A stretch of 64,000 nucleotides of DNA from Fimbriosthenelais zetlandica (lineage: Eukaryota). Every line of letters begins with the position of its first letter. Within the stretch, counting starts at the first letter, position 1. Below, in pieces: positions 31,483-37,440 of the stretch. A program made the position numbers and the translations under genes. Below the pieces are notes generated by a model. That model did no database searches and was not told where the DNA came from. It saw nothing but the letters and a program-made list of their open reading frames with translations. The stretch is from NCBI GenBank assembly GCA_977030845.1, contig OZ365114.1:25854001-25918000 (forward strand). Reading direction: 5' to 3'.

Positions 31483-34579
<3,097 letters not shown>

Positions 34580-35586: not shown

Positions 35587-37440
35587 TTAGTTGTGGGTGG
35601 AGATGCCAATGGCAGTGACGAAGACATTCATGAGCGTTATAAAGTAAAGCATGTAGAGAGCTAATTGTTGCCACCAGCGGATCTTCTTAAATGTCGCCAT
35701 CTCCTCTTTCTCTTCCTGTTCATCAGCCAGTAGTATAGCCTGCTTGTGACGGGAATCAGCAAACTGGACCTCAGTGTCCGCCTGTTCTTTCTCCCTCCTC
35801 ACACTATTCAGATTCTCCCTCGCCGCCGCCAGCTCTTTCTCGGCCTCTGGGTTTTTCAGTCCTGCTCCCTTTTTGGCCATGTCGGCCTCCAGCCTCTCCA
35901 CATCAGTGGTAGACTTGAGAACATTGGTGACAGCATTGGTCAGTTTCACCTTGGCCTGCTCCAGAGACAGCCTGCTCCTCTCTACAGAGTTACTGGCATC
36001 TTTAGGTGGTTCCTTCTTCAGGATGGACCATTCACAGCAGCCTGCTGCCTCACTCTCATCCTCATTGGTGAAGTATTGAGATGCGGTCATATCCAGTGTG
36101 TCTGCCCGCACCTCAGGAGCACCTACCCCTATAGGAACGCTGATGTAACTCGGGGCACGTTTCCTGTCATCTTTCTTGCAGCATACAGGGTTGCATTTGC
36201 AAATGAAACAGTTGAGAAAACGCCGACAAATGCTGGCCTTCTTCGCCTGGCTTTGATAACGCACATGACCTAAAAGATTAAAAAGAAATCATAGAAATTA
36301 GTAGACCATAAAAATTAGTGGACTACTGATTTTGACGGGCTACTATTACCCCTCTTCATTTTCCCTTCATATTAATTGACATGTTATATCATGGGGGAAA
36401 GATAGTAATCTTAGTTAGCAAAAATCATTTTCAAGTTAATTGAAACTCCGCGAGGGGGAGGCACTGAGTCCATGCATTTTGCTTACCTATATAAATGACG
36501 ATTATTCCCACAATGATCTGTAAGGCTATGGAGCCTATCAGTAAGGCCAGCACAAAATGGTAGAGTTTGTGTTTGCGTCCCACATCTAGCAAGATCTTTA
36601 ATTCTGTAACCTGCAGATAAAGGAGAAAAATATAATTTTTTTGTGTCCCGACATGTGCTTCAATGCTTTATATGAACCTTGTGCTGGATCAGCTCCTGTC
36701 TTTTTTCTTCTTTTAGGCCTACTCAGGCCCTATAGTATTGCGTTATTTAAGTTTGAATTTATTTAAATTAAAAATGAAATAAATTAAAAGCCTAGGGGTG
36801 GATATTATAGATACTCTACCTGAGTGAGGGCGAGTACGGAGAGGAGCGCCCCCTGGGCCTTGTTCTGGCTCTGTTCCAGGTCCGTGTGGCGGGCCAGCAC
36901 CTGACCATCAAAAACCATTAAACTTCATCCTCTATTAACCATCAAACAATGACTCACTAATTTACCTTCATCACTCATGGCTATACATTATATTAAATGA
37001 AAAACAAACCACCCATGTCATGGGACATCTGCATTAAGATCCGGGGAAAAAGTAATTTGGTTGGGATAGGCCTATACATTAGCCCTGTATAAACTTCTTC
37101 TCATTTTCAAAAGTACAAAACTATTCCCTGGTATAAAACAATGTCATACTTCTCATTGACAACATAAGTAAGAGACAGATCCCCACTTCAAACAAAATAA
37201 GAAAAATGTCATAGCCTAATTCTTATAGGCTGTGCATGCGCTTTAAAAATGGACAAATAGAAAACTATCTGGACATGTTCACAATTGGTAATGCATTCAA
37301 CTTTAAAGAATATTCGAAAAAGTCAGTTAATGATCTAGTTGAGACTATTATGTTTTTCAAAGACTTTTAAACAGTAAAAGAAATATGAAGAGTGGACTTA
37401 CCTCCTTCACCTTGGTCCTACGTCCGTTCTCATCCCCCAT
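35587..37440 (-). CDS. Ninjurin-family membrane protein (~308 aa) with a large insert between the two hydrophobic helices
   Basis: Exons 37440-37402, 36900-36820, 36610-36487, 36269-35587 splice in frame (927 nt). ELKILLDVG...YHFVLALLIGSIALQIIVGIIVI and QQLALYMLYFITLMNVFVTAIG match the ninjurin signatures LK..G..Y..LI..S..LQI.VG and LA......I...N.F.TA.G. Confidence 0.85.

What the first reader, a model, noticed from the sequence alone, without database searches (positions are those of the whole stretch)
35587..37440. Ninjurin with a ~197-aa Cys-rich plus coiled-coil insert between its two membrane helices
Seen: both ninjurin hydrophobic helices are recognisable, but the connecting loop (about 15 aa in human NINJ1, K103-F117 as recalled) is ~197 aa, encoded in the same exon as helix 4. 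It starts with a juxtamembrane Cys cluster (CRRFLNCFICKCNPVCC) and continues into a long predicted coiled coil (SVERSRLSLEQAKVKL...ADEQEEKEE). Established: NINJ1 polymerises through these helices to rupture the plasma membrane in lytic cell death. Inference: a new ninjurin architecture in which a palmitoylated coiled-coil module gates, clusters or anchors the membrane-rupture fold, or acts as a signal-sensing adaptor.
Basis: partly seen in the sequence, partly recalled or inferred. Interest (0 to 1): 0.82.

Follow-up and report, generated by a model that had tools for sequence, protein, structure and literature searches.

The report
Long-loop ninjurin with cytosolic hairpin stalk
This worm-like animal has a real gene for a ninjurin (the family whose human member NINJ1 tears open dying cells) in which the tiny turn between the two membrane helices is replaced by about 190 residues: a cysteine string, a sorting signal and a rigid helical hairpin. 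The layout is shared by at least 150 unnamed database proteins, and I found no paper that describes it.

Summary
A four-exon minus-strand gene (37440..35587, canonical GT-AG) encodes a 308-aa protein.

- **Ninjurin identity:** exon 3 passes Pfam Ninjurin (36.1 bits, cut-off 26). At family-profile level both halves match solved NINJ1/NINJ2 co-linearly.
- **The insert:** residues 83-272 stand where NINJ1 has about 10. They hold a six-Cys string, a YISV (YxxPhi) motif, a GCCEW motif and a 42-residue helix. A tight turn then leads into a 50-residue helix that runs straight into alpha4 (AlphaFold pLDDT 90-98).
- **It is coding:** against a related species, pN is 0.13 while synonymous sites are saturated. 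In two other species alpha1 to alpha4 plus the insert form one uninterrupted genomic frame.
- **It is not unique:** at least 154 database proteins share the layout. The only named ones are 'hypothetical' proteins of Capitella teleta and Intoshia linei. I found no paper on them.
- **Topology:** glycosylation sequons are 15-fold enriched in relatives' C-terminal tails, which puts the loop in the cytosol.

Most likely this is an undescribed long-loop ninjurin subfamily. Its lipid-anchored cytosolic stalk probably gives sorting or clustering machinery a handle on the ninjurin core. Palmitoylation, gating and lytic activity are untested inferences. The scan noted a second long-loop ninjurin elsewhere in this genome.

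The parts
37402..37440 (-). Exon 1: start codon and 13 N-terminal residues
   Evidence: ATG followed by a GTAAGT donor. A similar exon ending ...KVKE plus a GT donor is present in the related species, locus L001.
36820..36900 (-). Exon 2: amphipathic N-terminal ninjurin helix region (residues 14-40)
   Evidence: AG acceptor and GT donor. Conserved in L001. The family profile aligns this region to NINJ1 50 onwards and NINJ2 62 onwards.
36487..36610 (-). Exon 3: end of alpha2 plus transmembrane helix alpha3 (residues 41-82)
   Evidence: Pfam PF04923 Ninjurin, E 6.6e-9, 36.1 bits against a cut-off of 26, profile positions 25-64 of 102. Aligns to NINJ1 62-101.
35587..36269 (-). Exon 4: whole insert plus alpha4 and the stop codon (residues 82/83-308)
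   Evidence: One open frame. 79% identical to P0001 with synonymous sites saturated: pN 0.13, pS about 0.95.
36178..36228 (-). Juxtamembrane Cys string, six Cys in 17 residues (96-112), flanked by basic residues
   Evidence: At least 3 Cys in the first 60 loop residues in 48 of 55 relatives. pN 0.067 over the first 60 loop residues, about as low as in alpha4.
36136..36147 (-). YISV: YxxPhi-type motif (residues 123-126)
   Evidence: Tyr at this aligned column is at least 90% conserved. Y-x-x-hydrophobic is present in 50 of 60 relatives.
36028..36042 (-). GCCEW motif (residues 158-162), about 11 residues before helix A
   Evidence: G-C-C-E-W is invariant in the three closest proteins. A downstream CC pair is present in 37 of 55 relatives.
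35872..35997 (-). Helix A of the hairpin (residues 173-214)
   Evidence: AlphaFold helix 91-132 of exon 4, pLDDT 90-98. Heptad register significant.
35851..35871 (-). Hairpin turn (residues 215-221)
   Evidence: Non-helical residues 133-139 in the model. Corresponds to the conserved P-G-N turn of relatives.
35698..35850 (-). Helix B, the cytosolic extension of alpha4 (residues 222-272)
   Evidence: A single helix 140-223 of exon 4 runs into alpha4. Superposes on antiparallel two-helix hairpins at rmsd 1.2-2.4 A in the full-length relative.
35599..35697 (-). Ninjurin alpha4 transmembrane helix with its basic cytosolic start (residues 273-305)
   Evidence: The best PDB hits of the last 44 residues are NINJ1 110-142. 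The family profile matches NINJ1 113-142 with i-E 0.008 and NINJ2 130-153.

Best explanation
This is an intact, selected gene for a two-pass membrane protein of the ninjurin family. It belongs to an undescribed 'long-loop' subfamily. Named members come only from an annelid and an orthonectid; the rest are unlabelled contigs. The ninjurin core (amphipathic N-terminal helices, alpha3, alpha4) is kept. The roughly 10-residue cytosolic alpha3-alpha4 turn is replaced by about 190 residues, in this order. (i) A basic, Cys-rich juxtamembrane string. (ii) A poorly ordered linker carrying a conserved YxxPhi motif and, near its end, a CC-x-W motif. (iii) An antiparallel two-helix coiled-coil hairpin about 6-7 nm long, whose second helix is continuous with alpha4. 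Shown here: the gene model, ninjurin homology of both halves, purifying selection on the insert, family-wide conservation of the layout, the hairpin prediction, and a sequon distribution that places the C-terminus outside and the loop inside. Inferred: both Cys clusters sit at the membrane-proximal ends of the linker and are S-acylated. This would pin the base of the stalk to the inner leaflet. The YxxPhi motif would recruit adaptor complexes for sorting. The rigid stalk, being one helix with alpha4, would couple cytosolic events (partner binding or stalk-stalk association) to the packing of the alpha3/alpha4 hairpins that drives ninjurin self-assembly. Confidence is about 0.9 for the architecture and family placement and about 0.3-0.35 for the functional reading. 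The figure given blends the two.
For: Gene model with canonical splice sites, with the same exon structure and junctions in a related species. Pfam Ninjurin above the gathering score for exon 3 and for 9 of 10 full-length relatives. The family profile hits NINJ2 8szb at E 2.1e-7 and NINJ1 8uip/8cqr at E 1.6e-5, each with two co-linear stretches flanking the insert. Selection: pN 0.13 against pS about 0.95 for exon 4; pN 0.143 in the insert and 0.067 in the Cys region. 62 cluster representatives and at least 154 proteins share the insert plus alpha4. Loop length is 172-250 aa in 55 members. In genomic contigs L004 and L008 one uninterrupted frame runs from alpha1 to alpha4 through the insert. 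AlphaFold gives hairpin pLDDT 90-98, with helix B continuous with alpha4, both in the window's exon 4 and in full-length P0017. The model superposes on known antiparallel hairpins at rmsd 1.2-2.4 A. The heptad register is significant. Topology: N-x-S/T sequons occur at 2.91 per 100 aa in C-terminal tails (51 of 53 tails) against 0.19 per 100 aa in loops. The first 45 loop residues have net charge +9. NINJ1 termini are extracellular (PMC10307626; PMC12547243). YxxPhi is present in 50 of 60 members.
Against: There is no transcript evidence for this species. Acylation, adaptor binding, oligomerisation and lysis were not and cannot be tested here. The Cys region is modelled at low confidence (pLDDT 42-66), so its state is unknown. 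Its core spacing (C-x2-C-x-C ... CC) is fairly conserved, which also fits metal binding. The window's protein lacks the glycosylated C-terminal tail on which the topology argument rests, so its topology is inferred from relatives. A few relatives (P0025, P0031, P0121) have no Cys string, so the string is not essential to the fold. Foldseek did not retrieve NINJ1 for the full-length model.
Confidence: 0.6

Rival explanations
1. Gene-model artefact: the insert is retained intron or untranslated sequence, or an internal acceptor normally skips it to give an ordinary short-loop ninjurin.
For: No RNA evidence for this species. In-frame AG dinucleotides exist in the purine-rich end of the insert (reading).
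Against: A 190-residue open frame is kept at pN 0.14 with saturated synonymous sites. The same insert occurs in at least 154 proteins. One uninterrupted frame runs from alpha1 to alpha4 in genomic contigs of two other species. No alternative alpha4-like exon exists anywhere in the 64-kb window. A 1.5-kb Logan contig carries a complete 324-aa ORF of a relative with short flanks, as an mRNA would.
Confidence: 0.03
2. Inverted reading of the loop: it is extracellular or lumenal and the cysteines form disulfides in a folded ectodomain.
For: Eight Cys in the loop. Basic residues also precede alpha3 on the other side (G-R-K-H-K).
Against: Sequons are nearly absent from loops and present in 51 of 53 C-terminal tails. 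The first 45 loop residues have net charge +9. Cys number and spacing vary widely across the family (0-10), and the region is modelled as disordered. A conserved YxxPhi motif makes sense only in the cytosol. NINJ1 termini are extracellular.
Confidence: 0.06
3. The Cys string (with or without the CC-x-W pair) is a metal-binding (zinc or iron-sulfur) knuckle rather than an acylation site. The rest of the architecture is as in the best explanation.
For: The C-x2-C-x-C...CC core is conserved within the window's clade, and a similar core is seen in the main clade. A short helix is predicted over it.
Against: The count varies from 0 to 10 Cys and the spacing is not fixed. pLDDT is low even with 41-60 aligned sequences. 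No Pfam zinc-binding family is hit. The position directly after a transmembrane helix among basic residues is the usual context for S-acylation (established knowledge, not tested).
Confidence: 0.2
4. The protein does not rupture membranes. The bulky stalk on alpha4, plus a very short N-terminus, makes it an NINJ2-like non-lytic ninjurin. It would act in adhesion, signalling or trafficking, or as a regulator of other ninjurins.
For: NINJ2 forms filaments yet is non-lytic, and the NINJ1 N-terminal region is needed for activity (PMC12547243). Here only 13 residues precede the first helix. The best PDB profile hit is NINJ2. Another first-stage note says the core carries substitutions like non-lytic NINJ1 mutants (s1-217100, not tested). 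PMR-independent ninjurin functions exist (PMC13503662 abstract).
Against: Nothing here measures activity. The residue aligned with human F117 / NINJ2 Q103 is a conserved Trp, closer to the NINJ1 state.
Confidence: 0.35

Closest known systems
Vertebrate NINJ1 / NINJ2 (Pfam PF04923; PDB 8cqr, 8uip, 8sza, 9bia, 8szb)
   Same: Amphipathic N-terminal helices followed by two hydrophobic helices. Homology is co-linear on both sides of the insert, including the N-[IV]-F-[IV]-T-A-[FI]-G signature of alpha4.
   Different: The alpha3-alpha4 turn is about 190 residues instead of about 10. The N-terminus is only 13 residues before the first helix, where NINJ1 has about 44 disordered residues. Alpha4 is prolonged about 50 residues into the cytosol as one helix. 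Activity is unknown.
Capitella teleta CAPTEDRAFT_205572 (ELT98459.1, R7TXK0) and Intoshia linei A3Q56_00693 (OAF71566.1): unnamed 'long-loop ninjurins'
   Same: The same order of parts: ninjurin core, Cys string, YxxPhi, (G)CC motif, hairpin, W-Q-[HQ] and alpha4.
   Different: The window's protein sits with P0001 and P0002 in a separate clade (SH-aLRT 99), outside the 58-row main clade with support 100. It is 25-36% identical to main-clade members over exon 4. It lacks their Ser/Thr-rich C-terminal tail with its single sequon. Its turn reads G-A-G-L-K-N-P instead of P-G-N.
Antiparallel alpha-helical hairpin stalks (AcrA/MacA/HlyD adaptors, FliJ, YscO, prefoldin, ROP, p85 iSH2)
   Same: Geometry only: residues 170-270 of the model superpose at rmsd 1.2-2.4 A over 85-116 residues.
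   Different: No sequence relationship. Foldseek E-values are all above 0.03 and Z of 10-12 lies within the range of common helical arrangements. None of these is fused to a ninjurin helix.
Cysteine-string / juxtamembrane multi-Cys S-acylation sites (e.g. CSP-alpha, SNAP-25; recalled from general knowledge)
   Same: A dense run of Cys next to the membrane on the cytosolic side, among basic and hydrophobic residues.
   Different: This is a resemblance only. No homology and no test of acylation.

Membership tests
Ninjurin (Pfam PF04923) | Score above the Pfam gathering threshold | tested here: met
   Exon 3 alone scores 36.1 bits against a cut-off of 26, E 6.6e-9. 9 of 10 full-length relatives pass, and so does Capitella P0072.
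Ninjurin (Pfam PF04923) | Second hydrophobic helix (alpha4) homologous to ninjurin alpha4 and co-linear with alpha3 | tested here: met
   The window's last 44 residues have NINJ1 110-142 as best PDB hits, though weakly on their own (E 0.23). The family profile matches NINJ1 113-142 at i-E 0.008 and NINJ2 130-153, in the same hits as the alpha1-alpha3 stretch.
Ninjurin (Pfam PF04923) | Amphipathic helices alpha1/alpha2 before alpha3 | tested here: met
   The profile aligns to NINJ1 50-104 and NINJ2 62-123. AlphaFold gives helix 2-46 in relative P0017. The window's own N-terminal part was not modelled.
Ninjurin (Pfam PF04923) | Short (about 10-residue) turn joining alpha3 and alpha4 | tested here: not met
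   191 residues stand for NINJ1 102-109.
Ninjurin (Pfam PF04923) | Self-assembly into filaments; membrane rupture (NINJ1 only) | not testable with these tools
   Needs expression and assay, or multimer modelling of the spliced protein.
Long-loop ninjurin subfamily (defined here; Capitella CAPTEDRAFT_205572-like) | Loop of about 170-250 residues with a Cys string just after alpha3 | tested here: met
   The loop is 197 aa, with six Cys at residues 96-112.
Long-loop ninjurin subfamily (defined here; Capitella CAPTEDRAFT_205572-like) | YxxPhi motif at the conserved Tyr column | tested here: met
   YISV at residues 123-126. The motif is present in 50 of 60 relatives.
Long-loop ninjurin subfamily (defined here; Capitella CAPTEDRAFT_205572-like) | Antiparallel coiled-coil hairpin continuous with alpha4, followed by the W-Q-[HQ] entry into the membrane | tested here: met
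   Profile E-values down to 1e-47 over this part. AlphaFold pLDDT 90-98. Heptad test.
Long-loop ninjurin subfamily (defined here; Capitella CAPTEDRAFT_205572-like) | Ser/Thr-rich C-terminal tail with one N-x-S/T sequon | tested here: not met
   The window's protein ends 4 residues after alpha4. P0003 also has only a short tail of 6 residues.

The most novel reading that the evidence does not exclude
The stalk is a built-in cytosolic switch. Because helix B and alpha4 are one helix, acylation state, adaptor binding or stalk-stalk zippering would set the tilt and packing of the alpha3/alpha4 hairpin. That would license or block ninjurin polymerisation from inside the cell. This would be the first ninjurin with its own intracellular control domain, and a natural tool for asking how ninjurin assembly is triggered.
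Probability: 0.15. Interest if true: 0.8.

Novelty: new variant of a known kind. Interest (0 to 1): 0.55.

Why it matters
How NINJ1 senses that a cell is dying and switches from idle dimers to membrane-cutting filaments is still open (PMC12547243). All studied ninjurins are about 150-residue proteins with essentially nothing in the cytosol. A conserved subfamily carries a large, partly rigid cytosolic module fused directly to alpha4. This shows that evolution has coupled the ninjurin hairpin to intracellular machinery at least once. It gives a concrete construct set (with stalk, without stalk, Cys-to-Ser, Tyr-to-Ala) for testing whether cytosolic inputs can control ninjurin assembly. It also flags a family, present in public databases for years as 'hypothetical protein', that has not been recognised as a distinct ninjurin class.

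Tried and rejected
- **Word-indexed search, alpha4 region only**: only the two close relatives came back and no canonical ninjurins.
- **Pfam on the last 37 residues and on the whole of exon 4**: no Ninjurin hit for alpha4 alone. The insert gave only a meaningless TMF_TATA_bd hit at E 6.1.
- **PDB sequence search with exon 4**: chance-level hits only (FCF1, V-ATPase D).
- **Profile hits P0053, P0054, P0057 and P0059**, which matched alpha4 alone: I first hoped these were canonical ninjurins. They are exon-level ORFs of the same long-loop family, read through an intron.
- **Fold searches for an origin of the insert** (AFDB clusters; PDB Foldseek; VIA wide): generic helical hairpins only, and NINJ1 was not retrieved.
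- **ESM Atlas**: canonical chordate ninjurin clusters are nearest to the Capitella protein (score 0.82, a lead only). Nothing is related to the insert, and there is no large cluster with this layout.
- **Organism names:** searching papers for the assembly and run accessions gave nothing. DNA for P0002 and P0017 could not be fetched because the files are too large.
- **Alternative short-loop last exon in the window:** none found.
- **Not attempted:** Pfam, AlphaFold or multimer runs on the spliced 308-aa protein. It has no reference and I did not type it.

Full report
**1. What is there**

On the minus strand between 37440 and 35587 I rebuilt a four-exon gene. Every junction is GT-AG and the frame is continuous. 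The exons are 37440..37402, 36900..36820, 36610..36487 and 36269..35587, giving 308 aa.

Two strongly hydrophobic helices stand out, at residues 56-82 and about 282-305. The quoted Cys cluster is at residues 96-112. All eight cysteines of the protein lie in the loop: 96, 102, 105, 107, 111, 112, 159 and 160. No other alpha4-like coding piece exists anywhere in the 64-kb window, so there is no alternative short-loop last exon.

**2. Is it a ninjurin?**

- Exon 3 alone passes the Pfam Ninjurin model (36.1 bits, cut-off 26, E 6.6e-9, profile positions 25-64 of 102). It aligns to NINJ1 residues 62-101.
- The last 44 residues have NINJ1 110-142 as their best PDB hits (four of the five hits listed), but weakly on their own (E 0.23).
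- The decisive test came from the family. A profile of 18 relatives hits NINJ2 (8szb) at E 2.1e-7 and NINJ1 (8uip, 8cqr, 8sza, 9bia) at E 1.6e-5 to 6e-5.
- Most of these hits have two co-linear stretches. Profile 7-70 matches NINJ 50-123, and profile 245-274 matches NINJ1 113-142 (i-E 0.008).

So both hydrophobic segments are ninjurin helices. About 180 profile positions between them have no counterpart. In human NINJ1, alpha3 is residues 79-103 and alpha4 is 114-138, with both termini extracellular (PMC10307626). The window's residues 82-272 therefore stand in for a turn of about 10 residues that faces the cytosol.

**3. Is the insert real protein?**

The closest relative (P0001, 79% identical) lies on a genomic contig of another species. 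That contig has the same four exons and the same splice junctions.

Between the two species, synonymous sites are saturated (pS about 0.95) while pN is 0.13. By region, pN is 0.143 over the insert, 0.067 over the first 60 loop residues with the Cys string, and 0.059 in alpha4.

In genomic contigs of two further assemblies (L004 from GCA_022702875.1 and L008 from GCA_013332715.1), one uninterrupted frame runs from the first amphipathic helix through alpha3, the insert and alpha4. The insert cannot be an intron there. I have no transcript of the window's own species.

**4. It is a family**

A profile of the three exon-4 proteins found 62 cluster representatives among 1.84 billion proteins, 34 of them below E 1e-10. 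Many are complete 270-400-aa proteins with the ninjurin core in front, and Pfam confirms Ninjurin in 9 of 10 tested.

A second profile search found at least 154 proteins. Only two carry names, and both are filed as hypothetical or uncharacterised:
- Capitella teleta CAPTEDRAFT_205572 (ELT98459.1, R7TXK0)
- Intoshia linei A3Q56_00693 (OAF71566.1)

Other agents' notes call this genome probably annelid. That fits these names, but I did not test it independently.

On a tree, the window's protein groups with P0001 and P0002 (SH-aLRT 99). This group lies outside a well-supported main clade of 58 rows that holds Capitella and Intoshia. A protein from outside the main clade (P0009) and a main-clade one (P0076) occur in the same assembly. 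The scan also noted a second long-loop ninjurin elsewhere in this genome (s1-193496). The window's lineage is therefore probably a paralogue. This is suggestive, not proven.

**5. Anatomy of the insert**

Across 55-60 full-length members:
- The loop is 172-250 residues long.
- 48 of 55 have at least 3 Cys within 60 residues of alpha3. The count ranges from 0 to 10.
- 50 of 60 have Y-x-x-hydrophobic at a Tyr column that is at least 90% conserved. In the window this is YISV.
- 37 of 55 have a later CC pair. In the window this is GCCEW.

AlphaFold on the window's exon 4, with 41 aligned sequences, gives low confidence for the first 80 residues. After that it predicts helix 91-132, a 7-residue turn, and one helix 140-223 that runs straight into alpha4, at pLDDT 90-98. 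The full-length relative P0017 gives the same picture together with the ninjurin helices.

Residues 170-270 of the full-length model superpose on solved antiparallel two-helix hairpins at rmsd 1.2-2.4 A. Examples are ROP, prefoldin, FliJ, MacA and p85 iSH2. This confirms the geometry but shows no kinship: E-values are above 0.03 and Z of 10-12 is ordinary for long helices.

Both helices keep a single heptad register with small hydrophobic cores. No Pfam family, PDB sequence or Atlas cluster matches the insert.

**6. Topology**

In relatives, the tail after alpha4 almost always carries one N-x-S/T sequon (51 of 53 tails, 2.91 per 100 aa). The loops are nearly free of sequons (0.19 per 100 aa). 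The first 45 loop residues have net charge +9.

Together with the published NINJ1 topology, this puts the loop in the cytosol and the C-terminus outside. The window's own protein has no tail, so for this gene the topology is inferred from its kin.

**7. How it most likely works (inference)**

Helix B is the extension of alpha4, so the hairpin's open end sits at the membrane and its turn lies about 6-7 nm away. Helix A therefore starts near the membrane. That places the GCCEW pair, about 11 residues upstream of helix A, close to the bilayer, just as the Cys string is close to it after alpha3.

I read both Cys clusters as S-acylation sites that staple the two ends of the flexible linker to the inner leaflet. 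The YxxPhi motif would be presented on the loop between them for adaptor binding. The stalk would be a rigid lever on alpha4 through which partners, or neighbouring stalks, can influence packing of the ninjurin hairpins.

Nothing here shows acylation, sorting, oligomerisation or lysis. A metal-binding role for the cysteines and a non-lytic, NINJ2-like role for the protein both remain open. The residue aligned with human F117 / NINJ2 Q103, which governs cholesterol-dependent filament bending, is a conserved Trp.

**8. Novelty**

No paper in the library holds both 'ninjurin' and 'annelid'. None cites the two named accessions. Broader searches on ninjurin evolution or invertebrate orthologues turned up nothing on long loops.

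The sequences themselves have been public since the Capitella genome. The gene is therefore a new, divergent member of an existing but undescribed architectural variant of a known family.

**9. Verdict**

- This is a new variant of a known kind.
- Interest is moderate: a natural construct for probing cytosolic control of ninjurin assembly, in a lineage where no functional work exists.

Noticed in passing
window 34400-34579 (+): Last coding exon of an eEF1A gene lies about 1 kb from the ninjurin gene's 3' end, on the opposite strand (convergent). Pfam GTP-eEF1A_C, E 1.6e-13.
   Followed up: partly
window 35674-35676 (-), residue 280: The residue aligned with human NINJ1 F117 / NINJ2 Q103, the position reported to decide cholesterol binding and filament bending, is Trp here. 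It is at least 90% conserved as W in the W-Q-H/Q entry to alpha4 across the family.
   Followed up: partly
L004:1910-2797, L008:1233-2210, L010:3001-3933: Intron content differs between species. The window and L001 have three introns. L004 and L008 keep alpha1 to alpha4 in one exon. L010 has the whole 310-aa protein as one ORF on a 546-kb contig. Other species (P0053, P0054, P0057, P0059) appear to have an intron just before the E-R-x-T-F-R-K entry to alpha4.
   Followed up: partly
L008 and L011 (both GCA_013332715.1): One assembly holds both a protein from outside the main clade (P0009) and a main-clade long-loop ninjurin (P0076). This suggests two paralogues per genome. The record name of the same contig in ENA marks it as a metagenome, so one host organism is assumed, not shown.
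   Followed up: no
C-terminal tails of relatives (alignment A3): Nearly every relative ends in a Ser/Thr/Pro-rich tail with exactly one N-x-S/T sequon close to the C-terminus. The window's clade (window, P0001, P0003) has lost or never had this tail.
   Followed up: partly
window 36820-36900 (-), residues 14-40: Only 13 residues precede the first amphipathic helix, against about 44 disordered residues in NINJ1 that are reported to matter for lytic activity. Another first-stage note (s1-217100) claims non-lytic-type substitutions in this core. I did not test this.
   Followed up: no
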